A DNA stretch of 64,000 bases, taken from assembly GCA_977030845.1 (NCBI GenBank), contig OZ365112.1, positions 21,018,001-21,082,000 on the forward strand, in the 5' to 3' direction. Within the stretch, counting starts at the first letter, position 1; the number at the start of each line of letters is the position of its first letter. This document shows, piece after piece, positions 7,289 through 40,424 of this stretch. This DNA is from Fimbriosthenelais zetlandica. Taxonomy: Eukaryota. The notes under the pieces are model-generated. The model was not told the DNA's origin. It saw only the letters and a program-made list of their open reading frames with translations, and did not search any database. A program made the position numbers and the translations under genes.

Positions 7289-10204
7289 CTATAGGCTACT
7301 CCTTAAGCTAGAGTAGACCGATATAATGTGTGTTTTACTGTAGGCTAGGCTAATATAAGTGTGATAAATCAAGCTACGGCTACGGGATCATCGACATGTG
7401 GTTTTTATCGCGGGATGTGAGGGACGTTTATAAGGAAACGATTGTCTCCTTCCTTCACCATCGACAATCAATATGCAAGCCAACAAAAGAGATATGCAAA
7501 CCACGACATAAAGGAGGTGCCGAACTACCGTTAATTGCCGCGGGCAACACGATTGACACCCGATATATCATAGTCTTGTCGATCTAACTCTGGTCATTTG
7601 GTATACTCGGACCACCTCCGATATTTGTTTAAATACGATTTATGTGCATTCCGGATTTGTGTGATTTAAAACGGGGAATATTTGGTGACATTATAACATT
7701 TCAAGAATGTTGCTAAATCCCATTTTCGCAACGATTTACCACTTATATACCGGTGCATTGTATTTCGATGTTTATAGGCCTAAATGGCGTTTGACTATTC
7801 TATTGGATCGTTGGTAATTTACGTCAATAATAAAATGTCACACACATCAATCAAATATCAAACCAACAAAAAAACCTCATCATAATAATACATGCAACCG
7901 CCCCTGATGAAGCTTCATTTAAGCCGCAATATTATATTATTGGTGAGAAAATTACCCTGACAAGATTCATGATTACTGAAAGAGGTCCTTCTCATGGTGT
8001 TTAAACCTCCATGGGCGACCGTCATTAATCACACCTTATACTAATACATTCACAACTATTTCTGAACGTAAAAGCCGACGAAAATACTGCGCTTTGATTA
8101 TCAATTATCATCCTATTTTCATGAATTATAATTTCCCGTTCCCGTTTTGATGTGACATGCATGGGCCTATATATGATCATTGGACGTGGGTTTATGGATA
8201 AAATAATACCAGAAATATTTACAATCATGGGATCACGCCATTTATTTTGGAAACCCAATACCATTGAATCATACATGAAGACAATATCTTCGTGAGAATT
8301 ATGTCGTCTTTCTTTTTAGTCTCTGACCCAAATGTCATGTGGCCAGGGTGCCCTGTCTCATCATCACTCGCATCTAAACATAAAAATTGCAACCGTGTGC
8401 ACATTGTTGAAAAGCCATAAAACCAGAAAATTTAGATTTTCTCGTTTCAAAATGTATGATTAACTGGCAGATGTCAGTCCCCTGTATGTAATCCCATTGA
8501 CATATGAGGCATTTGTTGTCGGGAATAATCTGGGTAAACAGTACTCAGAACTGTAAAATGATCAATCAAAAGCTGTAGGCTGATTCACGTTCTCAATGAC
8601 CTTTAAAGATCATAAAATTCAGGTTAATAAGACGATAATTATATGGGTATAGCGCGCGGGGCATGCCCTTCCGATCAGCCTGCTCAGATTTTGTGGAAAT
8701 CTGAGCGAGCCCTGAGGAGATCATGTATAGAGGAAGCAATTAGATTGGACTCATCTCAATGTCTTTAAGCAGCATTCATGATTAATTTGATTTTGCATGA
8801 TGTAAGTGATGATTCCGGTAAATGATCCCCAAAGACCTTATCACATCATATATGTAAATGTTATAAGGCAAAATGAAAAATTAAATCCATAATACATGTA
8901 TAAGTAATCAAGTCATAGAGCTCATTGTAATTATATTGTAGCTGTGACTAAAATGCATGTAGTGAGGCATTTCATCGTGTTTTTGGGTGATAATCACTAT
9001 CAGACTGGCGTCAAACTGCGGTCAGACCCGTTAATCATGGCTCTCATGACAGCTATATGGTATCACTCCAGAAATATTATTGATGATAAATGATTAATGG
9101 TGGTTGTCATTCGTTTTACGAAACAAAATAAGCTCTTAAAATCATGATGAGAGAGCCATGAGTAGAAAAGTATCACTGATGATTATGATTATATATTGGG
9201 TTATCCAACAGGGTTCGAACCCCACCCACAACCCCACCCAACACTTCCCTTAAACCTTTCTACCTTTTCTATGCCAGCCCTATAACCAGTCATTCTCGCT
9301 CCCTTCATCCCTCTCCCCTCTGATCTGATTGTGAACAGTTGATAGCACTAACACTAACAACATATGACTGTGGTGAGAAAGGAGGGGGTTACATGTTATA
9401 AGTATTGACATCACGACTGGGAAATTATGATTTAAAGCTGCCTTATCCTAGGCAGTATAGACAGTTTCTTTCCTACGGCTTTGTATTGTAATATCATTCA
9501 TATATGTATAGTATTATTACAACAATAATAGCAAAAAGTATTTATGGGGCCGAAAAAAACACAATAAGCTTAAAGGTTATATGTACACACATGACTAGTT
9601 AAAACGCAGCTTTGAACTATACCAATGGGATATTGGGAAAAGTCGATTCGTCATCTAAAATGTCCATCAATCAAGGAAGAGGGATGAATTTACGACTTTA
9701 TAATCTATGCATTTTTACCTTTTGTTTCTGACCCACGAAGGACTAACAAGGATGTGAGAATGTAATACCTTGTGATGGACCGCCTGTTTCATTCATCCCA
9801 TTAACATCGAGTGTCAGTTAAGATACATACAGTATCTTCGGAAGCTCCTGTCATTGTTTATGCCTGAACTTAATTAATTAGCTATATTTCTAATAAAATT
9901 ATGAATAACAATATTTATGGCAGATAATACCATATGTGGTCTCGCACTGGAAAACTTTTGCTATATAGAACAATATATGGGGACAAAATTTCTACTTGGC
10001 TTTTCTACTTGTAAGCTAAAGTGTTATTGGGTTTCAAGGAAATTTGAAGCTTTGGTCATGTGGAAACTGGCCACATGCATGACATGTTAATGAAGTGTTG
10101 GCTACCCAACCGTCCTGCTTCTCTATCTAAAAGTAAAATTATTAGATTTATGATGGGAAGATATCAGAAAGAAAATGTAGATCTATGTAGCTTACAATAG
10201 AATG

Positions 10205-10470
10205 GTTGTCGGTTCGAACCGCGGCTGGGTCAAACCAAAGACTGAAAAAATTGGAACGAGTGGCTCTCTCGCTTGGCACTCAGCAATAAGCGGACAACAC
10301 TAGGACTGGTCGGCCTGGTGTCAGAATTATGTGACTGGGTGAGGTATCATTTCGTAGGCACATATGGCAAGAGGCATCACTGTACAAGAGAGCATAGGGT
10401 TCACTATCACAAGTAGGCACCCTCATGATATTAAAATTGTTAAAAGTGACGTTAAACAACCATACAATAC
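10205..10470 (+). mobile_element. 5'-truncated tRNA-derived SINE
   Basis: Pol III B-box GGTTCGAACC at the 5' end followed by GGGTCAAACCAAAGACT, a central ...GGACTGGTCGGCCTGGTGTCAG...ATGTGACTGGGTG... core and a 3' end ...TTGTTAAAAGTGACGTTAAACAACCATACAATAC with a short tandem tail. This resembles the organisation of mollusc/lophotrochozoan SINEs as I recall them; not searched. Confidence 0.7.
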
Positions 10471-11189
10471 ATTACTGTAGTTCACAGGTTCATTGTCTTG
10501 ATTAGAATTCACACCTGGTGAGTTTTCTACCACGTTTAGTTATCCTTTTTAGAAAAGCAAAAAAGGGGAAAAAATTACCCCATTGTATGCAAGTTATTAG
10601 TAGAAATGCAACAAAGCATGTCGATTCGCTAACACCTTGAACCTGTCATCTGCGTAAAATTTGTTTACTTTCAAACAATGATTGCTTTGCATCTTAGAAT
10701 GTTGTAGTTGATCTTTTTTTACCCTCTGGGAAAACAAAGTGACATGATTAATCCATATCACGTGTTCATTGACATCAGAGTGATTGACTTAACCTGGTGT
10801 ACAGGTGTCTGCATGGATAGTGTCCCGTGAAATAATGCCCCATGACAATTGACCATATCCCATAATGGTCATGATTTTTTCCCGCAATTGACAGATTTTG
10901 TTATAAATGAATTTGATGAAATTAATACTTTAATCCGCTGACCACCCCAGAAACACACGTGACCCATGTCATTTCAGTTTTATCCAGGGTAGAAATCAAA
11001 TCAAAGCCTTAGAGCAACATGGAAAACATTAATTTCTGGCTCATCTTTGCATAAATTAATATATGGACACCTCAATAGGAGGGCATAATTTGATGGGAGA
11101 CCATCACTCTTTAGTATGTACCATAGCAGACAATAGCCACACCTGTGAACGGCCCAGGCATCCCCCTCCTGGTCCAGTGGTTGGAAGGA

Positions 11190-11196
11190 TATAAAA
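11190..11196 (+). promoter_or_regulatory. TATA box of the Gly/His-rich secreted protein gene
   Basis: TATAAAA about 150 nt upstream of ATG 11344. Confidence 0.6.
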
Positions 11197-11343
11197 CGTA
11201 GCCTGTATCGGTCTACAGCCAGTCTCCAACCATCCACCTCCAGGACACCACTGGACCCAAGAGGATTACAGACGGTGACTGAAAGCTAAGCCAGAGGTGT
11301 CTCACCTCTTGTAAGATAGAAGAAGGAGGAAAGAACGTGAAGC

Positions 11344-14300
11344 ATGGCTCGGATCTTGTTTCTTGCTCTTGCTCTGGCCCTTTGTGTGGCCATAGTTAGG
11401 TCCACCGAAGAAACTACTGTTACAGAAACTACATCGGATAAGGATGGTGACCGTAAGTTTTATCTTATTTGTATTGGTAATCGATTAATTTATTTCTTCT
11501 GAAGATAAATTATAATGTTTTTGGTTGAAAGATAAAGTTGATACTTCCTTTGAATAGAGAGACAAATCACCTTTGATGAAGGGTTGGATGAAGCCGAAAC
11601 AATTGATTAAAACTTTATCAAATTGTTGATCAGAGTTCGTATGGGTAATTCAAAAGTTCGTAATAGCGATACCAGAAGAATACTCTGAATGTGTGCAAAA
11701 GTTCTAATAATTTCGTCAAAACTATAAGGACGAAAATGGCTTAAATTAATAATATAAATGTTTTTTGTACATAAATGGCGTAATTATAGTACAAAAGCAT
11801 CATTTTTTAATAGCACAGATTAAGTAAAAAAGGTAGTTAAGTTCTGTATTAGCAAATCCTTCCCACTTAATATTATATAGAAGGTCACGTTATTCACGCA
11901 TTGAACTTTAATAGCACATTGCTTTCAATGTTAATAATAGTAAAGTACTTCGGATCACCAGGTATGTGACGATTTAATGAGCGCCCGGATTGCTTGTCAC
12001 CAAGTGACACAACTTTCGACTATAGGCTATGATTCCATCATTACATTTGGTGTTAATGAGGCTGAACAACTGGTTCAGAGGCATTTAAATATATTAATAC
12101 CAACTAATGTGCCTGTGAAATCGGCTGAGCAAAGCCATGGATCTAATATAAATATGAAAAGTTCAGCAATATCATTGCACTCGATTATTAGTAAAGGAAT
12201 AATTAAACGATGCACGCCATTATGTTATCGGCGCTTGTGATGATCCATGATTGGAACATTTAAAATGACACCCCCAAGTTATGAAAACCTATAAGAGAAG
12301 CAAACAAGAAAATTTAGATAAGGACTGTAAAATATAATGACGTGACACTTGCAGAGCATTGATAGTTGTCCTATTATAAATCAAACTACTGCGCGATGGT
12401 CGCGCTGTCTTGAGAACCATGATTCCACTCGGATGACTCGCTCATAAGAATAATGAAGTTTTATGACATAGAAAAGTTCACAAATTGAACTTCATCATGA
12501 GTGGCCTCTAAGGTTATGGGGCGGGAAAGATACATGTCCGCCATTTCAATCTCGCCTCAGGCGTGAAAATCCGTGGTCATGTCGATCACCTCTCACTTAC
12601 ACGTGCTCGACATACCGGAAGTTAATAATATGGCGATTATCACTACGTATATATATATATCGAAGTGATGTATCCCACCATGGCAGATACGTGACAGTAG
12701 TAATGATGCATCGTAATTACCATCCAATATTCAACATACATCTATGCTTAAAGCAACACTTTTAAAGAAAGTTTCAGCGTTTACGATTATCTTGATATCA
12801 TCTCGACTGAAGTTGATGGGAATGGATAAAAAATAAATTGTGAAGTTTTGCAGTCTTAGGAATAGCCTATGGAAAGTTATTAAAACAGAGGTCAACTTGT
12901 GTATGTGCTTGAATACATAAGTTCACACTACCGGCGTATAATTAATGCAAGACCCATTCCAGGAACTCTTATTCGAGTTCAGCATCTGTCTATTGTTCAC
13001 CAAAAGCTAACCCTTAGATCATTTATGTAATTCGATATGACTTATCACCTTTTCTCAACCTAACGGTATATACATTCTGGAAGAATTCATGCCTAGCAGC
13101 CTCAGCGTCTCGCGCACATTGATTTAAATCTAGCTTGCGCCTCAAGGTATATACAGCGACTATAGATGCATCCCCCTACGGCCATCCCAGCCATCGCTGT
13201 TGGTCATGTGACCGGACAGGTAATGAGTGAAGGAATGTGAATAGACATGCACATATATGGACATGAATGAGAGATCAATTGCCCGATAAATAGATGTCTC
13301 AATTCAGCGTAGCATTATTTCCTATAATGTCACAACGCCTTATTACTTCAAATGGGCCAACCATTATTGTTTTATAGATGCTCATCTTATTGCCTCTCGG
13401 ACATTGCTGTCCTCGAGGCACATATACTTCATGCATCAATATGAAAAATTTCTAGGCATTATTATTTGCAAACTGAATTTCTGCAAAGAGATTAATCGTC
13501 GATGAGGTACTTTGATTCTGCTGGCTTAAACACTCAATGGAATCAAGGAACTTATAAACTTTATTTGACGATATTTCCCATCAGACCTACACATTACTTT
13601 CCCACCAAGTCACCGGTACAGACAGGAAGTGGCTCATTGCTCGACCACCAGAGGTGGGAGAGGAGGGGATATAGCTGTCCTGCTGAGAGAGGCGGCGATT
13701 AAATGAATGTGTACCAGTTAGTTGAAGTGGTTATGTCTCCATAGCTTTCACAGACATACACGGTCACTGGTCGCTCAGAGTCAGGGAATATCCCCGACAT
13801 TTACATGCTATTATTGATATACGTGCACTCCCACACGAGCCACACATTTACTCATACTCTGGTCTAGACAGGTGTGAATGCCAAGTTTGATGGACAGGTT
13901 CATTTGACCTACCGGTATATATTGTTTTCATTTGTATGTAACAATTATTAAATTTTCAATGTAATTTTGTGACACAAGACATGCACACATTGCCAAAAGC
14001 ACATTTCAGTTTTATATATTGCCACACCGGAAATATAATGATTAAATCAAAGAATAAAACAACGTCTAAATGATATGTAAACTATTTTTCTTTTCAGATA
14101 AATCAATTCTCATTACGCAACATAAAGGCATGGATGATAAAGATGAAGAGGAAATGGAAAAGTATCGCCTTTATCAATACTACCGTTACCTCAGCAAATG
14201 GGCTGACATGGGAGAGAAATACCCCTCTCTGTCTCCCGCTCAGCTCTTCAACAAGGTGAGCAATGACAACGAGAATGAGATCCACAGCCGTTCCAAGAGA

Positions 14301-15149
14301 GACACATCAGGGTGGGGAAATACTGACGGTTACGACTCTTATAAAGAGTCCTATCCAGAACCATCTTATCAAGAAAATACTTATCAAGACAACAATGTCG
14401 CCGATAATCCATACATTACTAAATATCAGCAGCAGGCAGCAGAGGAACCACAACAAAGATACGAAGAGGAACAGCCTGAAGCAAAGTCATACCGTCTCGA
14501 TGATGGATATGGACATGGTGGGCATGGACATGGTGGACATGGTCACGGTGGTGGTGGTCATGGTCACGGCGGTGGTGGTCATCACGGAGGCGGCGGTTAC
14601 GGAGGACATGGAGGTGGTCATCATCAAGGTCATGGAGGTGGTCATCATGGTGGTGGTGGATATAGTAGTGGTGGTGGCGGCTACAGTGGTGGACACAGTG
14701 GCAATACGCACGGAAGTGATCATGGAGGATATGACTTTGGTGTGTCCGGGCAGGGTGACCATGGTGGTGAGGGCTCTCACCAAGGAGGCGGTCACTTTGA
14801 AGGGGGTGTAAAATGGCATGGAGGTCACCATGGTCAGGCTAGCGGTAAGGTTGGTGATCATGGACACTTCGGCAAACACTGGAAAGGTCAAAGCCAGGAT
14901 GGCTTCAAGAAGTCCGGACATGACAGCTACAAGCATCACGGACACAAAATCAAGACCTACTCCTACGGTGGACATGGTTGGTACAAGGAGCACCACCATG
15001 GAGAGATTCAAGGCCAGGGAGGCGCTGGTGGACACGGTCAGGGACACTCTGCTGGTCACAAACAGGGCAAGCACCATCACGAGTCCCACCCACACTCACA
15101 GCACCATGGCAGCTCTGGTGGCTGGAAGAAGTACAACGGATGGGATTAA
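11344..15149 (+). CDS. Secreted Gly/His-rich prepro-protein (386 aa; uncharacterised)
   Basis: Exon 1 11344-11452 (MARILFLALALALCVAIVRS signal peptide, then TEETTVTETTSDKDGD, donor C|gtaagt, phase 1). Exon 2 14098-15149 (acceptor tttttcttttcag, phase matches, stop TAA). Furin site RSKR at 14289-14300; GHGGHGHGG... domain from 14511; AATAAA at 15594. Confidence 0.88.
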
Positions 15150-15593: not shown

Positions 15594-15599
15594 AATAAA
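15594..15599 (+). other. Polyadenylation signal of the Gly/His-rich gene
   Basis: AATAAA about 445 nt after the stop, followed by a GT-rich tract (tgttgtttttggtgt). Confidence 0.5.
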
Positions 15600-17031: not shown

Positions 17032-19059
17032 ATGGATGTTAAGGATGGAGACAAAGCTATGGCCACAAGGAGACCCAGCTCCCCGGCTAAGAGGAAAATT
17101 TCACCAGGCGGCAGATCAGCATCACCAGCGAAAAGGAATGTAACTCCAGTACAAAGGTTAGAGCCATTACCGTACCATACCGTACATGTGAGAGCTATAT
17201 TGGAATCAAGAGCAGTTATATTTAATATTAGAGAATTTAAATTGAATTTTGATTGCAGAAAAACATACGAAATTCACCAATATTCGTTATGAATGATGAA
17301 TATTATTATATACTTTTCATATAGGGTCTCATCACCAGGGGCAAGGAGAGCATCACCCACTTTCAGAATGCCACCAAGTTCTGTCATTAAAAGAAGCTCA
17401 GCAGCAGAATCACAAGAGCATCGGAGAAGCTCATGGGCTGACTTTACCCTGCTTCAGGAGATGCAAGCTGTAGCAGACCTAAACGCAACAGCCTTGGCTA
17501 AATATGAATATCTTGAAACTTTGGCAACCAATGTAGAACAGGTGTGCATCAATCTGGCAACAAAGAGGGAATCTCTGGAACGAGAACTGCTTGACTGGAA
17601 AAACATGCTCGTACAGAAAGTAGAAGGGTGCTACACACAGGTACTCAGCCAGTTGCTCGAAACTTTCGGCACGCTGGAAGATGAAGCACATCTTAACCAA
17701 GAGTACACCTCCAATATGCTCTGGTCCTCACACCAACTTTTTCAGACGGTTAAGGAGTCTCTGAACTCTCCTGATATAGATACACTTGAGTTACTAAGAA
17801 ACAGATTAAATAAGAAAATAACACAAATTGATGCTATAGACGAAGAAGAAATGATCATTCGGGACGAGACTGAGGATTGGAGGTATGTAAAACCTCATAT
17901 AGGTGATGATGATATTTGGATGCTCATCGGGCACTTTGATATGGGGATGAACAAATGTGATTCAACTGCAACTACTCCAGTGTCAACACCTTGTCTGGAT
18001 GCTGACTTACTTTCTATGTTTCAACCAGAGGAAAAAGCTTCAAACCTCAATATACTGAAACCAAGGAACCTTCCCGTTGTCAGCTTTGCAGTCAACAATG
18101 CTATTGATGAGAATTTAAATATTGGTCGGCCAGATATGAAAGTAGGCCTACAGGAGAGTCCATCAGCTCCACAGCTGGTGACATCTTTCCAAACTAGGTC
18201 CAAAAACGACACAAACAGATGTCATCCTTTATCCCTTGCTGTCAGTGCCGATGGAGACATTATTGTGCCAGACAAACACAACAAAAAGGTGAAGGTGTTT
18301 GATATGGATGGTGAACTGGTGAGGGAAATCACACATGAAAATCTTCATTCCCCAACGTATGTAGCCATCACACCTGATAATGACATTGCAGTCTGTGACA
18401 GAAAAGCCGGGGACATTAAACTTTTCAATATCCAAGGGATACTGTTGTCCACTGTTTCTAAACTGTTCAAATCTCCAGCGGGTATAGCATTCACATCGTC
18501 GGGAGATCTCCTCGTGGCTGACACAGGCAGAAAGGCCATCCACGTGGTTTCAATTCAGGCAGCCACTATCAAATCTACCATTAAGCACTTCACAACCCCA
18601 GTGCCCGGATCAAGGTGCATGGAAGAGGAATTGAGTCAGATGCAATGGCCCCATTGCATCAGTGTCAGCTCTGATGATGTCATCATTGCCTCAGACCGAT
18701 CTGGTGACATAATCCAGATGCTAGATCTTTCTGGAAGGGCCCTTGGACGTTATGGGGCAACTGGGACTGGAAGGAAAGGGCGGTTCCAGGGCCCATATGG
18801 CACTGTGGTGAGAGACAATGGTGAATTGTATGTGTGCGACTATGGCAATCACTGTTTGCAAGTGCTGTCACCTGGTGGTCAATGGAGAGAGCCATTGCTA
18901 ACAACCGATCATGGTTTACAGCATCCATCGGCTGTACAGTGGTTGGGAGCCAATAGACTTGCTATTTGTGAATATTATAGCGGACTGGTAAAGATATACC
19001 AGCTTCCAGACCAGAGATATGGTAGACATATTTCAAGGCCATCATCACCTGTCTATTAA
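17032..19059 (+). CDS. Coiled-coil + NHL-repeat (TRIM2/3/71-like) protein without RING or B-box (about 619 aa)
   Basis: Exon 17032-17156 (donor AG|gttaga, phase 2) joined to exon 17325-19059 (acceptor ttttcatatag). Helical coiled-coil region (about aa 75-220) and about six NHL blades, e.g. HPLSLAVSADGDIIVPDKHNKKVKVFD, SPTYVAITPDNDIAVCD, SPAGIAFTSSGDLLVADTG, GPYGTVVRDNGELYVCDYGNHCLQV. AATAAA at 19155. The start codon could be 17059 instead. Confidence 0.85.
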
Positions 19060-21462: not shown

Positions 21463-22091
21463 ACGAAGAAAATTGTTTTCCTTCTATTCTCATCAACTAT
21501 GGACCAGAACCACCTTGAAATGGCCAGAGAAGAGACATAACTGGATGGATTTTCTCCACTATGAAATACAGGACTTGAAATTACATAGGAACTTAAGGAG
21601 AAGCGTCTAAAGAAAAGCAGGAATTGGGCGAGCCAGACCCTGTTTGTTGGTACGAGGGACGTGGCCCTATCACGTGGTACGTCAAGCTTTACTAATTTTT
21701 TGCGCATAAATGAGCTATTTCTCAAAATCAACCCCCCGATACAGACTATTTGGTGTATTACCTTTCCTAGAAGGCCGTTGTTGTGTCGTTAAGTGTCCGT
21801 CGTAGTTTGCATTTAGTGTGGAAATCTCCCATTGACTCCCCTCCCTGTCTCTTGGATTTATGTGGCCATTGAAGCCAGTCACGTGATTTAGTATTGTACT
21901 CATTTTGCGATATATCTATACTATCATACTGATTTTATTTTTTCCCTTACAGACCGGGTTGTCCCGGGCGGGTGACAGGCTACGTGAATAAAACCCCACC
22001 GTTTGGCAAAAGGTTTTGTGGAATGTGTTTAGTCGGGTTTGATTCCTGGTGCTAATGCATGTTCACTCCACAGCCGCTAAGGCTATGGTGC

Positions 22092-25000
22092 ATGGCAGCT
22101 ATGGCACCCGCTCTTACCGAAGCGGCAACTCAAGTTCGGGCTAAGTTGCCGACAGTAGGACAGACAAACGGACGATTTTCCGGCAGAGATAGTCCTTCAA
22201 CCTCTCCAGATCCAACGGATACCCTGGCCCCTTCCCGCCCCTCCCTGGGAACGCAGGGGCTGTCATCGCCTGGAGAGGCGGGCAAACCTCAGTCGCATTT
22301 GTTGACCTTGTCTACTACAAGCAAGCAGCCAGACATCTCCCCATCTTACACCATTGCCCATCTCAAGCCAGCCAGTTTCAAGGAAAACTCAAATACCATT
22401 GCTCAGTCTTTTCTTGTGAGAAGTGTGAATAAATTGACAACTCCTCCACCAGCCCTGTCATCGCCTGTAAAACACCACGGCCTTTTGACAGCTGCTGATC
22501 ATCTGACCAAGTCAGCTAAAGTCCTGGGTCATTTAAATAGGGCAAGTGACCAGCCCCCTATTACAACACATGCAAGCCGGATGAACCAACCAAAGATCAC
22601 CCTACCCAGTCCTTCTTCCTCAAGTACAACAGACAACCCTACAAATAGCCTGTCTGGCAGTATAAAAATGCCCCATACTGCAGCAGCTCCCAACCTTCAA
22701 GCCAAAAAAACTACAAATAACATGGGTTATATTTTCAAGACAAATACTTCCACGGACAATTCTCAGACAAACAGTTCTCTGCCACGTTCTGGGGAAGGGG
22801 TCAGTTCTGGTGGTAATGATATGATGATGGAGGCTACCCCACAACAGACAGAACTGGAGGCTGATGGTGTGAGTAGTTTACAAGCCGTGGAGGATGTGAC
22901 ATCAGTTACCCATATAGATGTCTCCTCTACATCCAACACTGGCATGGCTGATGTGGGTATTTTGAACAATCTTGATCGTGTGGCTGAGACATCAAAACGA
23001 CAGAGAGATCTGGAGCGTCAAGCTGACCGACTCCTACGAAGGATACGCAGAATACAAAGCAGACAGACTATAGTTCATGTTCAACAACAGTTGAGTGGTT
23101 TTGTGGATCACCAACATAAAAATTTACAAACCATTGCCAGGGCCATGAAGCCCCAGCCTTCTAGTAATGTGGACCTGAAAACAGAACTATTTCACAGTGA
23201 AGATGTGAAAAGTTTATCTACAGCAGCCCTTGTTAGTCTAGTCAGAAGATTGCAAACCTCACAACAGGCAATGACATTGCGGCAAAGGTTGGCTAATGCC
23301 AACCAGCCTCCTTGTGACAGTGGTACTAGTGTGCTGCGGTTGGACGAAGATCTTTGTACAGAAATGAACCGGGTATCCAGTACTTTGCAGAAGGATCTGA
23401 AACATCTAGAATCTGCTATGGATTCAGATGCCACTGAGAGTAGTTCAGGGGGCGAGAGCTGTGATGAGGACTTTGACTATGACGAGGAAAAGATGCCCAA
23501 AACCTACCTGTAAGTCTCCTAGTCAATTGAATCGTTAATTATAAAATGGTAATCAACCCATTTAAAACTATAGGAAAAGTGCATGGTCAGTCATTGACAA
23601 TGGATTCCCCTTCATCCCTGTACATCATTATACCGGTATTCAACTTATATAAGACTGCCCATAATAAGAGCTGTTTTGCTGTTTTATAATAATAATTATT
23701 AGTAGAATTTTAGTTGTTTCAGAAATTGAGTAGTAATATTCAATAGAATTCTTGAAAAGAAAATTTTACTTTAAATTAAGCTAAAAATAAATTTTTCATC
23801 AACAGAATTAAACTTTAACAATAAAAGAACTAATTAAAGGAACATGAATTTTGTGCACTTTTGATGTAAGAAAGCAAAATGTAAAGTATTCGTTGAACAA
23901 GACGATAAATTTAAAAGGTTTTAAAGTAGATTAGTAAATAGTTATTTAAAGGATTTCTTCCCTCTCGGGCTGTTAACTGTGTGCCCATACATAAGAAAGA
24001 TAAAAGCCTAAAAGGTTTTTAGGTCAAATTCCAGTGACTTTGATAGTGACTTATGCTATAAAGGGAGAGGAAAACATGGTTATCAGCAGCTCTGTTCTAG
24101 ATAATCTAACAGGGTGTAATATTCTGTCAGTGACAAGGTAGTACTGGTTATACACTGGTAAAGGTTCAGTATATCATATCTAAAACACCAAGTCATAGAG
24201 CAATAGGCTTAAATTATAGCTCATTATAATGGCAAGGCTCACACCAGGTCACTTCTGTCAGCACTTTTGGTGCATCCTTTGAGAACTTTTTCTCCCTGCC
24301 TTGTCATTACTAGTCTTAGACGAGTGACATTCCTAGTTAAAAGCATTTGGCTGATAATTCTCATACATATCAGTACTGTATGTATAGGTCATGGGTTCAG
24401 GTGAATAATTCTGATCCAAGTATTAGGGAAATAATATTTTCTGGGGACAAAATGACCTTAGGGCCAAGGTTTCTTCCAGGATACTGTCTAGATAACTGCC
24501 CATTCCCTTGGCCTAGTACATGTAATGAAATTTATTGAATTGACAATTTGTTTTTAGACGTCGACGAGCAGAGTGGAAGTGGGCCACCGAACGTGCTGCA
24601 GTTGCTGCCAAGTGGACGTGGCTGCAAGCACAGGTCTCAGACCTTGAGTACAGGATCAGACAGCAAAGTGACATCTACCGCCAGATCCGGGCAGCCAAGG
24701 GGGCAGTAGTGCTGGGAGAGGCCGTACCACCTGAAGACATTCTCTCCAAATTCAGGAACAACAGGGCAGGCCGGCGCTTATCTCCACTCGAAGAAAAAAT
24801 TGCCAGTCTAGAGAGAAAGAACGAAATGTCTCCATGCAACCTTTCCACCCTGTTGTCTAATGTGGACAAACAGTCGATGCGGCTGACCCAGCAATTGGGA
24901 AATGTCCTCTCACCAGCAGACAGTCCATTACTAAATAACAGCAAGCCTCAGACTGCACCATCAACTCCCCCTAAAACACCCAACACACCTAATGGTTACC

Positions 25001-28000
25001 TTAACCCTGCCAGTTCCCGTAGTGACAGTGGTACTACACCCTGTGCCAACACGAGTAGTGCTGGTCAGACTGACGCTAATGACAGTAAGAGTAAGCGATT
25101 AAGGACTGATGGACCGCTCTCATTGTCGTTTGATCCCCCTTCTCCTGCTGCAGACAATACTTGCCAGTCTGCCAGGTGTCGACCTGTGAGGAGCTATGGT
25201 AAACGTAAACTGTTATATACTAGTGGGCTGTATCAGCTCAGCCGTAAGGCGGCCAGACTGTCATCTGTACCGTGTTACTGTTACCCTCCTGCTGTACCCT
25301 GTGCCATGTGTGGTGGCAGGTACAACAACATGCAGACTGTCAATCCTGTTAGCATGCCTACTGGGGAGAGAATAGCCCTGCTAGATCCTTCCTATCATCA
25401 AGTCCTATCATTTCCACAAGGTGAGTTACTGAATTTAGGAGTTATTCTAAAGGGTTCTTCTTTCCAGCTCAATTAGAAAATTCTTTGAAAATTTTTAGCA
25501 TCTGCCACAGCCGATTCTTTTTACTGCTGGGTTTAGGTTTATAGAATTGTCTTGACATTTGTCCTAACTGTTTTATCTTATCTTCTCAGATACACCTTTA
25601 CCCATACACTTTGATAATCTACTACGATCTGGAGAGTGGCAACACAAACCCTTACCTACTAAACCTTTACGAGCCTTAGCTGGAGGAAAGGGGTGAGTAG
25701 AGCTAAGTCAATCATGTGCCTTCCTGGATTTTATCTGGCTATCTTAATGACATCTTTTTTCAAAATTATATTTTGACTTTGTCAGGTATTTCTTTTCCGA
25801 AATAATAATCTTTATCCATAATATTCTTTTCAAGGAAACAAAAGCTCTCTGCCGGTGAACGAAAGTACAAGAAACTAGCCAAGAACTCTTCAGCCATTAT
25901 CCTATCTTCTGCGAGTAAGTACCAAGTTATTTGAGTATCTTCAGTATGAGAATAGTGTGGAAATATTACCAGGGGAACATTAGGAACACACCCACGAAAA
26001 ATATTGTAAATCTGACATTCTTAAAACATGACAAGTACAGGTATCTAGACCAACTGAAATAGGGCATAAACCTAAAAAAAATGGAACAGTCAGTACAGCA
26101 AAATGTCCCGTTCCTACCCCACCCTCCCTATTTCTTAATTTTGTATCCACAAATAAAGTATTTGATTAAACGAATTTTTATCTTGAGATAACTATAAAAT
26201 ATTTTTTGTTGCAGAAATCCGAAATAAATATGACATGAAGCAAATAAGCAGAAATAATGGTTCAATGCCCAGTTCCCCCAGTAAATCGGTTACATCCCCA
26301 GCTAGAACTAGTGGATCGCGTAAACGTACCGCAGAAACGAAAGGGAAGAAAAGAAAGTCTTCATTATCCGGTTTAAAAAGTGTGCGGGGTAAGGCGATAG
26401 AAGTCACTCATTTTGCTAAAATAATTTGCAGTTTAGTTTTACATAAATCCTGGCATTCAATCTCTTATGCTAAGATCACTTTCTACATAATCATCAAATC
26501 TCATAGATTAATGATAAAAAATACTGAGTTCCTTCAAATTTAAGCTGCAGGCAAATTATTTCAATTAAGCTGAACAGTGATAAGAATTATGAATATATCC
26601 TGTTCTCTTAAATAGGGGACAAATCCCCAAAATCTAATTTACAACCATCTTGTACTTAACCTTTGAAAGGACATAAGTTTTACGGAGAAATGACACATTG
26701 GAAATGAAAATAAATATGTTCACTTGATTTTGTGATCCATATTTTGACGGAAATATATATTATTTCCAGATGGCAGTAGGAAAAAGCGTTCTTTGTCGAA
26801 CCCTGTCTCTATGGCACATTCCGTTGTGTCTCCATCTTCAACGAGTGCCTCGCCTCGGGACACACCGTCACCTTTGTCTCACTCGTGTTCCTCAGCTACA
26901 ATGAGAGACCTGAAGGAGGCCCAGAGGAGGCGTAGAGGGGAGAGTGCGTTTGACATCAATAACATTGTGATACCCTACAGCATGGCTGCTTCAACTAGAG
27001 TAGAGAAGCTGCTCTATAAAGAAATCATCACTCCAAAGTAAGTGGAGACGCCTTACAATTCATTTATCACTCCCCTAGATCAAACTGTGATTTAGTTCAG
27101 CAGTTGGACACCAGAGTGCAGCACAAAATCAGCTGATTCAGTCTAAATGATTCATTGATTTCCTATGCCTTTAGTCCTACTTGAAACAACTGGTTAAAAA
27201 TAACTTTGAATTTTCAGGTGGCGAGAAATCACGGAGGATGAAAAGAAAACTATAGCAGAGCTGGCAGCCTTGTCCCTACCTACGCCTAAAAACACACCCG
27301 AGCAACTGACAGAGCCAGAGAAAGAACCAGAGATGAGTACCAACCCGCCTGTACAAATAGTGAACGGACCAGTACAAGATATTGAAGCGCCCTCTCAGAG
27401 TACGAACGGTCCCACTGAACCCACTGAGACGACGACCCCAGAAGAGATGAGCATAGACAGCAAGTTACCAGAAGATAACGTCAGTCCGGTTAATGGTGGT
27501 AACGGACTGGTAAAAACTGCCATGGTTGACACTCCAACTGAAGAGGACGAAGATTCAGCTATTGTAAGATCATTCATTTAAATCATTAATTGAATCCAAA
27601 GTATGATGTCCATTGGCCTTGTCATAATAGGCTGTCTTTCTTGATGAATATCCGAACAAATTCGGAAAATTAAGCTTTAAGTTGTTAGTTCTCTATCCAT
27701 TCCTGTGATTAGTCCATATCGATGATTGTTGAAACATTTCTCCTTTAATAAACGATGTGATATTGTATTCCAGGAGGATTTATCTGATGAGCTGTATGCC
27801 ACACGCCACATGAGATGTGAGATCAGAGAGAAGAAGCGATACACGTCTGTCATCAAGAAGAAATCTCGTGGTGGTCGCTCAGACAGCATCGGTCTACCTG
27901 AAGATGAGTCCATTGAACTATCGTCTCAGCTTCCCTCAACCCCGCCTGGCACGCCCGCCACTCCCGTCACTCCAGCCCAGGCAGCAAGCATCCCTAACAT

Positions 28001-28505
28001 CCCAGCAGCTGCCCCTCAACTGACAGCTCTCATTGATGAAGAGTTAGAGCTGAATGGAGGGCGGAGACGATCTGGCTCCTGCTCATCCCATGAGGACTCC
28101 TCTCTAGGTCTACGTAGACGGTCCTTGTCAGGCCGGTTACGCTCCAGGGTCTACTCCAGCAATGCTCTAAGTGCAGAAGACCAGGACGAATACTCGGGTG
28201 TTGATCCCTGGATGCTGAGGACATTCCCCCTCTGTGATGAGGAATACACTAACTTGTTTCTAGAGAGTCCTTCAGGACCGTCTAGTACAATGACTGTGAC
28301 TCGTGGTTCATCAGCTACCACTCGTGGTGGCTACACCTACAACACCACCACACCTGAGAACAGTAACCCAACATCTCCTATACCTAGTAGCTCCAATAGC
28401 TCGGTCATAGATGATGATCCCAATGATCCGGAATGGACAGTGGTTGACGGGGCTGAGAAACCGGTACAACCACCAGGCCTGGTACTTAAACTAGCCAAGA
28501 GGTAG
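22092..28505 (+). CDS. KANSL1: KAT8 regulatory NSL complex subunit 1 (KANSL1/NSL1), 1327 aa
   Basis: Exons 22092-23509, 24558-25420, 25590-25692, 25835-25914, 26215-26388, 26770-27037, 27218-27563, 27774-28505 (sum 3984 nt, all GT-AG, phases consistent). N-terminus [12 protein letters not shown] matches human [12 protein letters not shown]; conserved [13 protein letters not shown]; [25 protein letters not shown] coiled coil; WDR5-binding WIN-like TCQSARCRP (about 25160-25185); PEHE domain [32 protein letters not shown]...[12 protein letters not shown]. Confidence 0.96.
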
Positions 28506-32249: not shown

Positions 32250-40234
<7,985 letters not shown>

Positions 40235-40424
40235 CCTTCTATTGACGCAGCACACCTATTTGTCTCCTCCTCTATCCCTTTTCAAATTAGGAAGACAATA
40301 GAGAGAGGGTCCCCTGATGTGAGTCTATGGAATATCCAGTGTATGTGTCGTTATGGGGAGGGAATGCCCGTTTGTATAGTGTCCTTCTTCTGTAAGGGTC
40401 TCCCTCAAACTAAGAAGAGGCGCG

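What the first reader, a model, noticed from the sequence alone, without database searches (positions are those of the whole stretch)
11344..15149. Unrecognised secreted Gly/His-rich protein: candidate metal-binding structural (jaw/chaeta/cuticle/radula-type) or antimicrobial protein
Seen: signal peptide, a Cys-free mature chain, and a long GHGG/GGH/GGGY low-complexity block from 14511, also rich in Tyr, Trp and Lys. Established: similar Gly/His-rich secreted proteins harden invertebrate tissues by Zn/Cu coordination and catechol cross-linking (Nereis jaw protein Nvjp-1, Glycera jaw protein, Dosidicus beak His-rich proteins), and Gly/His-rich peptides are also insect antifungals (tenecin-3, holotricin-3). 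Inference: a lineage-specific biomaterial precursor with its own TATA promoter, inserted among conserved housekeeping genes. This is the most novel gene in the window.
Basis: partly seen in the sequence, partly recalled or inferred. Interest (0 to 1): 0.75.

Follow-up and report, generated by a model that had tools for sequence, protein, structure and literature searches.

The report
Secreted histidine-glycine-rich protein, new conserved family
This is an intact two-exon gene for a secreted, mostly floppy protein rich in glycine and histidine; its tail is strictly conserved in relatives from other animals, so it founds an undescribed family that probably builds or hardens some outer material, although its tissue and job are untested.

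Summary
Exon 1 (11344-11452) and exon 2 (14098-15149) join in phase through GT..AG into a 386-aa protein. It has a signal peptide, its only Cys lies inside that peptide, and it is 23% Gly, 12% His and 6.5% Tyr.

It is not an orphan. Exhaustive and profile searches found relatives at about five other loci in environmental or host-derived assemblies. They share a signal-peptide-only first exon with a phase-1 intron, a single R-x-K-R site, an acidic head, an LDDGYG start, a variable Gly/His/Tyr block and a ~125-aa basic His/Lys/Trp/Tyr tail.

The parts before R-x-K-R are unrelated between species; the parts after it are collinear. The tail is under very strong purifying selection (31 synonymous against 2 non-synonymous changes, dN/dS about 0.01).

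There is no Pfam or PDB match. There is no homology to Nereis jaw protein Nvjp-1 beyond composition.

My best reading is a furin-processed, pH- and metal-responsive structural precursor (confidence 0.5).

The scan has noted other Gly/His/Tyr-rich secreted genes elsewhere in this genome.

The parts
11190..11195 (+). TATA box (TATAAA)
   Evidence: It lies 31 nt upstream of the Inr-like A at 11221. Sequence inference only.
11219..11225 (+). Initiator-like element CCAGTCT, with the predicted transcription start at A 11221
   Evidence: Read. It matches YYANWYY at canonical spacing from the TATA box. No transcript data.
11344..11452 (+). Exon 1 coding part: signal peptide (11344-11403) plus a short Thr/Glu-rich stretch, ending in phase 1
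   Evidence: The relative L001 has the same layout: a signal-peptide-only exon followed by a phase-1 intron.
11453..14097 (+). Intron of 2645 nt, GTAAGT...TTTTCAG, phase 1
   Evidence: No Rfam family in it. The junction is not verified by RNA.
14098..15149 (+). Exon 2 coding part (residues 37-386 plus the stop codon)
14133..14306 (+). Predicted helical hairpin of the pro-piece (residues 49-76 and 82-106)
   Evidence: AlphaFold2 gives pLDDT 80-94 for exon-2 residues 13-70. No homologues cover this part.
14289..14300 (+). RSKR, a furin-type R-x-K-R site (residues 101-104), the only one in the protein
   Evidence: chance of p 0.007 in shuffles. The equivalent sites are RTKR in L001 and RQKR in L008, in both cases just before the conserved part.
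14301..14498 (+). Acidic Tyr/Glu/Gln-rich head of the predicted mature chain (residues 105-170, pI 4.07)
   Evidence: The L001 counterpart has pI 4.05.
14499..14774 (+). Gly/His/Tyr low-complexity block (residues 171-262), opened by the conserved LDDGYG (14496-14513)
   Evidence: The DNA repeats are imperfect, with periods of 15-24 nt. The block's length varies among relatives.
14775..15146 (+). Conserved basic C-terminal module (residues 263-386, pI 9.55; 27% Gly, 21% His, 11% Lys, 4% Trp)
   Evidence: Alignments A2 and A5. z 13 against shuffles. dN/dS about 0.01 between L005 and L007.
14919..14990 (+). Most conserved core, HDSYKHHGHKIKTYSYGGHGWYKE (residues 311-334)
   Evidence: 21 of 24 residues identical to L005. 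L001 against L002 over the 25 codons from 14931 (KHHGHKIK onward): 15 synonymous against 1 non-synonymous difference. A weak beta-hairpin prediction, pLDDT 65-68, in one of two AF2 runs.
15594..15599 (+). Poly(A) signal AATAAA, giving a 3' UTR of about 460 nt
   Evidence: Sequence inference only.

Best explanation
The gene encodes the precursor of a secreted, largely disordered His/Gly/Tyr-rich protein of a previously undescribed family.

Steps supported by sequence:
1. A signal peptide sends the chain into the secretory pathway.
2. A furin-type convertase cuts after RSKR (residue 104). This removes an 84-residue acidic pro-piece with a predicted helical hairpin and releases a 282-residue, roughly 29.5-kDa chain.
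3. The released chain has three blocks: an acidic Tyr-rich head (pI 4.1), a Gly/His/Tyr spacer, and a basic His/Lys/Trp/Tyr tail (pI 9.6).

Steps inferred by analogy with His-rich structural proteins (Nvjp-1, Glycera MTP, squid beak HBPs):
4. In acidic secretory granules the 45 His of the released chain are protonated. Calculated net charge is about +26 at pH 5.5, which would keep the chain soluble.
5. On release at neutral or seawater pH the charge flips to about -5 to -10. Head and tail can then attract each other and Tyr/Trp/His contacts form, so the protein condenses or coacervates.
6. Deprotonated imidazoles then bind Zn or Cu, and Tyr may be oxidised, hardening an extracellular material such as chaeta, jaw, cuticle, tube lining or egg coat.
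7. The strictly conserved tail is the sequence-specific part. It serves assembly, metal binding or binding to a scaffold.
For: Gene model and signal peptide.

Family: the exhaustive phmmer search found three true relatives of the tail. The profile search and the metagenome scan added more.

Shared gene layout: a seven-exon, all GT/AG, Cys-free, 927-aa model in L001 has the same signal-peptide-only exon 1 and phase-1 intron.

Processing site: R-x-K-R occurs once in each of the two assembled models (window and L001; chance p 0.007 and 0.10). L008 has RQKR at the matching place. The chains after the site are collinear between species. The chains before it are unrelated (z -1.4).

Constraint on the tail:
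- L005 against L007: 31 synonymous and 2 non-synonymous differences, dS 0.66, dN 0.0066.
- L001 against L005: pS 0.87, pN 0.17.
- Only the exons align at DNA level.

Charge switch and block pI values.

Disorder outside the pro-piece.

Composition and behaviour of known His-rich materials, including pH-induced phase separation and Zn- or Cu-induced assembly: PMC9999432 and PMC13120676.

Language-model neighbours are cuticle- or matrix-type proteins, but their scores are below the reliable range.
Against: There is no transcript, tissue or protein evidence of any kind.

There is no homology to any characterised structural protein.

His content (16% of the processed chain) is below that of Nvjp-1 (27%) and Glycera MTP (40%).

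A dN/dS of about 0.01 is unusually strict for a bulk material protein. It points to a specific partner or ligand rather than a purely compositional role.

Cleavage at RSKR, the pH switch and metal binding are calculated or inferred, not measured.

The organism and its hard parts are not identified. The neighbouring gene only points to a lophotrochozoan; 'annelid' rests on earlier unchecked notes.
Confidence: 0.5

Rival explanations
1. Host-defence protein. In this reading it is a furin-processed Gly/His-rich antimicrobial or antifungal effector, in the manner of insect attacins and gloverins, tenecin-3 and holotricin-3, or nematode Gly/Tyr-rich NLP/CNC peptides. His protonation would give activity at acidic pH.
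For: It has a signal peptide, an acidic pro-piece, a dibasic convertase site and a Gly/His-rich product. The two-exon layout with the leader in exon 1 recalls sea-urchin SpTrf genes (abstract of PMC5491942, seen). The basic tail has pI 9.55.
Against: The released chain is 282 residues and carries net -5 at pH 7 because the acidic head stays attached. No further R-x-K/R-R site exists that would free the basic tail. The tail evolves under dN/dS of about 0.01, whereas immune effectors usually evolve fast (general knowledge). There is no sequence match to any named antimicrobial family. There is no RGD motif.
Confidence: 0.12
2. Soluble metal-handling protein. In this reading it is a secreted His-rich buffer, carrier or store for Zn, Cu or Ni in body fluid or gut, not built into a solid. 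The conserved tail would form defined metal sites. GGHGW, HFGGW and SSGGW loosely recall the Cu-binding HGGGW unit of the prion octarepeat; that comparison is from memory and is a lead only.
For: There are 48 His in the whole protein, 26 of them in the 124-residue tail, with many HH, HxH and GHG units. Strict conservation of His, Trp and Gly positions in the tail fits defined sites better than bulk composition does.
Against: The layout of acidic head, Gly/Tyr spacer and basic tail, the Tyr richness and the disorder are typical of condensing material proteins. No known metal-binding domain was detected.
Confidence: 0.13
3. Scaffold-binding or assembly protein. In this reading the conserved aromatic/His tail binds a partner sequence-specifically, for example beta-chitin of chaetae or a matrix protein, while the Gly/His block is only a flexible spacer. 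It would be a matrix organiser rather than the bulk hardening phase.
For: Conserved aromatic positions (W, F, Y, Y-x-Y, W-Y, W) are spaced through the tail. A weak beta-hairpin is predicted at the core. dN/dS is about 0.01. The spacer's length is highly variable and it is absent in P0001.
Against: No match to any chitin-binding family. The hairpin is not reproduced when the tail is folded alone. No binding data.
Confidence: 0.15
4. Not a working gene: an untranscribed or decaying open frame kept open by low-complexity sequence.
For: There is no RNA evidence. The other frames of the GH block are also open. One relative, L004, shows frame breaks in its last exon, though on a contig of only 2x coverage.
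Against: The non-repetitive 135 codons before the GH block and the 124 after it are also open. The signal-peptide exon, splice phase, promoter and poly(A) signals are coherent. The window copy keeps every conserved family feature, and relatives are under strong purifying selection.
Confidence: 0.05

Closest known systems
Nvjp-1 and Nvjp-1-like His-rich jaw proteins of Nereis/Alitta (including Nai11527)
   Same: Both are secreted proteins of roughly 30-50 kDa and are predicted or known to be disordered. Both are rich in Gly, His, Tyr and Asp/Glu and contain GGH, (GH)n, GYGHG and GYGGH motifs. In both, a His-rich low-complexity part is combined with Lys/Tyr/His-containing less repetitive parts.
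   Different: There is no detectable homology. The family motifs GHGWY, GGWK, KWHGG, HGHFG and DDGYG are absent from the Nereis sequences. Alignment to their conserved modules scores z 0.6 against shuffles. Nvjp-1 is not among the exhaustive phmmer hits. His content is 16% here against 27%. An R-x-K-R-delimited pro-piece and an acidic head are present here. Jaw localisation and Zn binding are unknown here.
Squid beak His-rich proteins (HBP-1 to -3)
   Same: Gly 20-35% and His 10-16% with Tyr. The published mechanism is soluble when His is protonated and self-coacervating near neutral pH. The calculated charge switch here goes in the same direction.
   Different: HBPs are built of tandem GHGxY and GAGFA pentapeptides and are Ala-rich (16-19%). 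Here there is a single GHGWY, no pentapeptide array and 3.6% Ala. No sequence similarity was found.
Glycera jaw multi-tasking protein (MTP)
   Same: A secreted Gly/His-dominated protein of about 30 kDa; metal-triggered phase separation is published for it.
   Different: MTP is 49% Gly and 40% His, and the review lists no aromatic residue among the rest. The present protein is far more diverse, with Tyr/Trp/Lys and a conserved non-repetitive tail.
Sabellariid cement proteins (Pc-1/2 Gly-rich basic, Pc-3 poly-Ser, Pc-4/5 His-rich basic)
   Same: A basic His/Lys/Gly/Tyr-rich component is paired with an acidic component; condensation in granules by charge pairing is published. The long-form relatives L001 and L008 carry a ~330-residue Ser/Tyr-rich stretch before the R-x-K-R site, which is loosely Pc-3-like.
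   Different: Here the acidic and basic parts lie in one chain. Ser content is far below that of Pc-3.
Pfam DUF4779 (PF16009), arthropod 'histidine-rich glycoprotein-like' proteins
   Same: They are the nearest clusters by language-model features (score 0.82).
   Different: The score is below the 0.9 that the tool names as the limit for more than a lead. hmmscan against Pfam finds no match even at E 10.
Sea-urchin SpTrf (Sp185/333) proteins
   Same: Two exons, with the leader in the first and the whole mature chain in the second. A Gly-rich region is followed by a His-rich region. They are secreted (abstract of PMC5491942; further details from memory).
   Different: No RGD motif here, no sequence similarity, a single copy in the window rather than a cluster, and slow rather than diversifying evolution.

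Membership tests
Nvjp-1 family (Nereis jaw His-rich proteins) | Sequence homology to the conserved non-repetitive modules (KF-x-SHY-x-YKGYD ... GHGGYVKVV / GHGAYNEY) | tested here: not met
   The motifs are absent. Smith-Waterman against 2000 shuffles gives z 0.66 and 0.63. Nvjp-1 is not recovered by exhaustive phmmer.
Nvjp-1 family (Nereis jaw His-rich proteins) | Secreted, with Gly about 36% and His about 27%, and GGH/(GH)n/GYGHG motifs | tested here: inconclusive
   It is secreted and the motifs are present, but Gly is 30.5% and His 16% in the processed chain.
Nvjp-1 family (Nereis jaw His-rich proteins) | Located in the jaw tip and binds Zn | not testable with these tools
   No expression or proteome data. 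The species and its anatomy are unknown.
Squid beak HBPs | Tandem GHGxY / GAGFA pentapeptide repeats, Ala-rich | tested here: not met
   One GHGWY only, 3.6% Ala, and no period-15 protein repeat of that type.
Pfam DUF4779 (PF16009) | Match to the family HMM | tested here: not met
   hmmscan found 0 families at E up to 10.
Small Gly/His-rich antimicrobial peptides (tenecin-3, holotricin-3 type) | Short cationic mature peptide (under about 100 residues) | tested here: not met
   The product after the only R-x-K-R site is 282 residues with net -5 at pH 7. The features of the reference peptides are from memory.
SpTrf (Sp185/333) | RGD motif between the Gly-rich and His-rich regions; clustered multigene family | tested here: not met
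   No RGD. No second copy in the 64-kb window. No sequence hits.
Furin/proprotein-convertase substrates | A luminal R-x-K/R-R site after a signal peptide, conserved in relatives | tested here: met
   RSKR (window), RTKR (L001) and RQKR (L008) each lie just before the conserved chain. Actual cleavage is not testable here.
New family defined here (R-x-K-R, acidic head, LDDGYG, Gly/His/Tyr block, basic KW-GG...KTY-x-YGGHGWYKE...GGWK tail) | Collinear post-R-x-K-R chain with the conserved C-terminal module ending the protein | tested here: met
   Alignments. z 13 against shuffles. E 3e-8 to 5e-5 in a library of 1.8 billion proteins.
New family defined here | Signal-peptide-only first exon followed by a phase-1 intron; no Cys in the mature chain | tested here: met
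   Window and L001. L004 keeps the same first exon at 97% identity.

The most novel reading that the evidence does not exclude
Two linked claims. First, the ~125-residue His/Gly/Lys/Trp/Tyr tail is a new kind of sequence-specific module that looks disordered but is as constrained as a core housekeeping protein. It would be a defined Cu/Zn-binding or scaffold (chitin)-binding and assembly switch. Second, in the long-form relatives one precursor is cut at R-x-K-R into a Ser/Tyr-rich polyanion-like chain and this His-rich chain. That would make a one-gene, two-component condensing system for building an annelid material.
Probability: 0.15. Interest if true: 0.75.

Novelty: new variant of a known kind. 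Interest (0 to 1): 0.5.

Why it matters
His-rich secreted proteins are the basis of metal-hardened, mineral-free biomaterials such as worm jaws, squid beaks and mussel coatings, and they are models for pH-triggered phase separation.

Only a few unrelated families are known, and most were found by starting from the material. Here a further family is defined from genomes alone. It has three features that the known ones are not reported to have:
- a conserved convertase site that separates a variable pro-part from a conserved product;
- a built-in acidic-head and basic-tail polarity;
- a low-complexity-looking tail under extreme purifying selection.

That last point matters beyond this gene. It gives a clean test case for what sequence-specific constraint means in a disordered, His/Gly-rich region. 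If the tissue is found, the protein would be a ready candidate for recombinant material, metal-binding and coacervation work.

Tried and rejected

2. Word-index protein searches with the N part and the C part at full-length size range found nothing. Relatives came only from the exhaustive search, a profile of the tail and the metagenome scan.

3. Known families and structures gave no match: Pfam for the window protein and for relatives, and PDB by sequence and by profile.

4. Nvjp-1 kinship. By eye, GHGAYNEY against GHGWYKEH looked suggestive, but the shuffle-controlled test rejected it. For that test two ~60-residue modules were copied from the supplement read.

5. Structure. AF2 gives a confident helical hairpin only in the non-conserved pro-piece. 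The core beta-hairpin is weak and not reproduced. I ran no fold search because the model is mostly below pLDDT 50.

6. Synteny. No shared flanking genes between L001 and the window. The long-form N-terminal domain is absent from the window.

7. Literature. The family motifs occur in no indexed paper. The metagenome accessions occur in none either. Searches on annelid chaetae and tube proteins found nothing matching.

8. Atlas feature searches stayed below the reliable score.

9. Rfam found nothing in the window.

10. The prokaryotic promoter/terminator scan is irrelevant for this eukaryotic gene.
Full report
**1. What is in the sequence**

The region holds a coherent two-exon gene on the + strand.
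- The ATG is at 11344 in a strong context (A at -3, G at +4).
- The first 20 codons give a classical signal peptide.
- Exon 1 ends at 11452 before GTAAGT.
- Exon 2 begins at 14098 after a pyrimidine-rich tract and CAG.
- The intron is phase 1.
- The joined CDS of 1161 nt gives 386 residues and a TAA at 15147-15149.

TATAAA at 11190 lies 31 nt before an initiator-like CCAGTCT (A at 11221). The predicted 123-nt leader has no ATG. AATAAA follows at 15594.

I scanned every ATG-started ORF from 8001 to 14097 for a hydrophobic leader plus a phase-1 GT donor. That scan found this exon and one much weaker candidate at 9158.

The protein is 23.1% Gly, 12.4% His, 8.0% Ser, 6.7% Lys, 6.5% Tyr and 1.8% Trp. 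Its only Cys is residue 14, inside the signal peptide.

**2. Anatomy of the protein**

| Residues | Part | Properties |
|---|---|---|
| 1-20 | Signal peptide | |
| 21-104 | Acidic pro-piece | pI 5.1; ends in RSKR, the only R-x-[KR]-R in the chain (p 0.007 in 20,000 shuffles) |
| 105-170 | Tyr/Glu/Gln-rich head | Very acidic, pI 4.07 |
| 171-262 | Gly/His block | Opened by LDDGYG; 54% Gly, 21% His; imperfect DNA repeats of 15-24 nt |
| 263-386 | Basic tail | pI 9.55; 27% Gly, 21% His, 11% Lys, 4% Trp |

There is no N-glycosylation sequon and no RGD.

The chain after RSKR has 282 residues and a mass of 29.5 kDa. Its calculated net charge is +26 at pH 5.5, -5 at pH 7 and -10 at pH 8.1.

AlphaFold2 predicts a confident helical hairpin in the pro-piece (pLDDT 80-94). 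It gives less than 50 almost everywhere else. The exception is a weak hairpin at KIKTYSY-GGHG-WYKEHH (pLDDT 65-68), and this hairpin was not reproduced when the tail was folded alone.

**3. The gene is not an orphan**

Word-indexed searches found nothing. An exhaustive phmmer run over 1.8 billion representative proteins gave seven hits. Four of them are low-complexity matches. Three (P0001, P0002, P0003) align with the last 70-180 residues right up to their own C-termini.

Against composition-preserving shuffles, these three score z of about 13. A profile search and a metagenome scan added P0008/L004, L005, L007 and L008.

All these relatives come from assemblies labelled as metagenomes (ENA ERZ25069580, ERZ26222911, ERZ26051807; NCBI JAAUXT, JAAUXW, JAAUYA, JAAUYG). 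The contigs are AT-rich and intron-containing, so they are animal DNA. I could not identify the animals.

For the window itself, the neighbouring NHL protein has its nearest clusters in molluscs and brachiopods. Earlier unchecked notes of this scan call the genome annelid.

**4. Comparative anatomy**

In L001 I could assemble a seven-exon model with canonical GT/AG at every junction and no stop codon. It gives 927 residues and no Cys at all.
- Exon 1 encodes only the signal peptide plus ten residues.
- Exon 1 ends in phase 1, as in the window.
- A long unique and Ser/Tyr-rich part ends in RTKR, the only such site (p 0.10 by shuffling).
- What follows RTKR is collinear with the window's post-RSKR chain. 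It has an acidic head (pI 4.05 against 4.07), LDDGYG, a GGY/GGH block, KW-[YH]-GG, GHF-x-KH, [FY]KK...D-x-YKHHG-x-K-x-KTY-x-YGGHGWYKE, and a GGWK...G-x-[ND] end.

The parts before the site are unrelated between the two (local alignment z -1.4).

L008 is a second long form.
- It aligns with L001 at 31% identity over about 865 aligned positions.
- It shares conserved blocks with L001.
- It has RQKR followed by AAS...LLDDPG at the same place.

The window has no trace of the long-form N-terminal domain, so it is a short form.

The Gly/His block varies greatly in length. In P0001 the Gly runs are replaced by a His/Asp/Lys-rich stretch. Intron positions also differ. The tail is one exon in the window, L005 and L007. 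It is split after ...HYK in L001, and split again after KEQTHG in L008.

**5. Selection**

Between L005 and L007 only the exon and about 120 nt after it align at DNA level. Within the 125 codons of the tail there are 31 synonymous and 2 non-synonymous differences (dS 0.66, dN 0.0066, ratio about 0.01).

Between L001 and L005 synonymous sites are saturated (pS 0.87), while pN is 0.17.

Between L001 and L002, the first 25 codons of the last exon (the conserved core from KHHG onward) show 15 synonymous and 1 non-synonymous difference.

This proves that the frame is coding. It also shows that the tail, although it looks like low-complexity disorder, has a sequence-specific job.

The conserved position of R-x-K-R, at the border between a freely changing part and a conserved part, is good indirect evidence that the site is used.

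**6. Comparison with known proteins**

There is no Pfam family even at E 10 and no PDB sequence match.

Language-model neighbours are arthropod DUF4779 'histidine-rich glycoprotein-like', prisilkin-like, pro-resilin-like and cuticle proteins. Their scores are 0.6-0.8, below the tool's reliable range.

The closest described proteins by composition are the Nereis jaw proteins. The 2026 paper on Nereis aibuhitensis lists Nvjp-1-like sequences. None of the family motifs occurs in them. Their two conserved modules align with the window tail no better than shuffled versions do (z 0.66 and 0.63). So the likeness is convergent composition, including shared short motifs such as GYGHG and GYGGH, and not kinship.

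Squid beak HBPs need tandem GHGxY/GAGFA repeats and Ala richness, which are absent here. Glycera MTP is far more extreme in Gly and His.

**7. Mechanism**

Shown by sequence and comparison: a secretory leader; a conserved convertase-type site; a conserved three-block product; disorder; a large calculated His-driven charge switch between pH 5.5 and 8.

Inferred by analogy with HBPs, Nvjp-1 and MTP: the chain is stored soluble in acidic granules; it condenses on release when His loses its charge and the acidic head can pair with the basic tail; it is then stabilised by His-metal bonds and Tyr chemistry.

The extreme constraint on the tail suggests it is more than filler. It may be a metal site, an assembly nucleus or a scaffold-binding piece. 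I give the structural-precursor reading 0.5.

The rivals are:
- a scaffold-binding organiser (0.15);
- a soluble metal-handling protein (0.13);
- a defence protein (0.12), weakened by the size and negative charge of the product and by slow evolution;
- a non-functional frame (0.05).

**8. Limits**

- The species of the window and of the relatives are not identified.
- P0001 could not be inspected as DNA.
- The L004 copy has frame breaks in its last exon on a 2x contig, which may be assembly error.

**9. Verdict**

The scan has noted other secreted Gly/His/Tyr-rich genes on other pieces of this genome (s1-210709, s1-223631, s1-191757). Those were reported as orphans. Whether they are related to this gene could not be tested here.

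Noticed in passing
L001:2583-8519 and L008:1507-6288: These long-form relatives are about 930 aa. Before the R-x-K-R site they carry a ~280-residue unique part with conserved blocks (ISYPSHILSVGTEE, VQNDYNEYG, GYVV-x-x-KPGFD) and a ~330-residue Ser/Tyr/Pro-rich stretch. Cleavage would give two very different secreted chains from one gene. No Pfam match.
   Followed up: partly
L004:8880-9300 and L004:3214-3347 (minus strand): L004 is a close relative of L001, from another ENA assembly at 2x coverage. Its last exon reads in three different frames and lacks the KTYTYGGHGW core. A fragment of the Gly/His exon is duplicated on the other strand upstream. This is either assembly error or a decaying copy.
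   Followed up: partly
window 14775-15146 compared with L001:7780-8519, L005:800-1174 and L008:5330-6288: Intron positions inside the conserved tail differ among relatives: none in the window, L005 and L007; one in L001; at least two in L008. This implies repeated intron gain or loss in a short conserved region.
   Followed up: no
L002, L003/L006, L005, L007, L008 (NCBI JAAUYG, JAAUXW, JAAUYA, JAAUXT) and the ENA ERZ assemblies: Assemblies filed as metagenomes hold intron-containing animal genes. The protein databases therefore list prokaryote-style ORF calls (P0001-P0003, P0008) that run from intron into exon.
   Followed up: no
window 17293-19056: A 588-aa open frame with NHL repeats (Pfam E 6e-25) lies 2 kb downstream. 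Its nearest feature clusters are mollusc and brachiopod TRIM-NHL-like proteins.
   Followed up: no
window 22059-23513 and 27726-28505: The first is a 484-aa Ser/Thr/Pro-rich open frame with a coiled, charged C-terminal part and no Pfam match. The second, 4 kb further on, is an open frame with a PEHE domain (below Pfam's cut-off, E 4e-7). Together they may be exons of one MSL1-like gene.
   Followed up: no
window 39095-40255 (minus strand): A 386-aa Ser/Pro-rich open frame without a Pfam match, probably a large exon of a nuclear regulatory protein.
   Followed up: no
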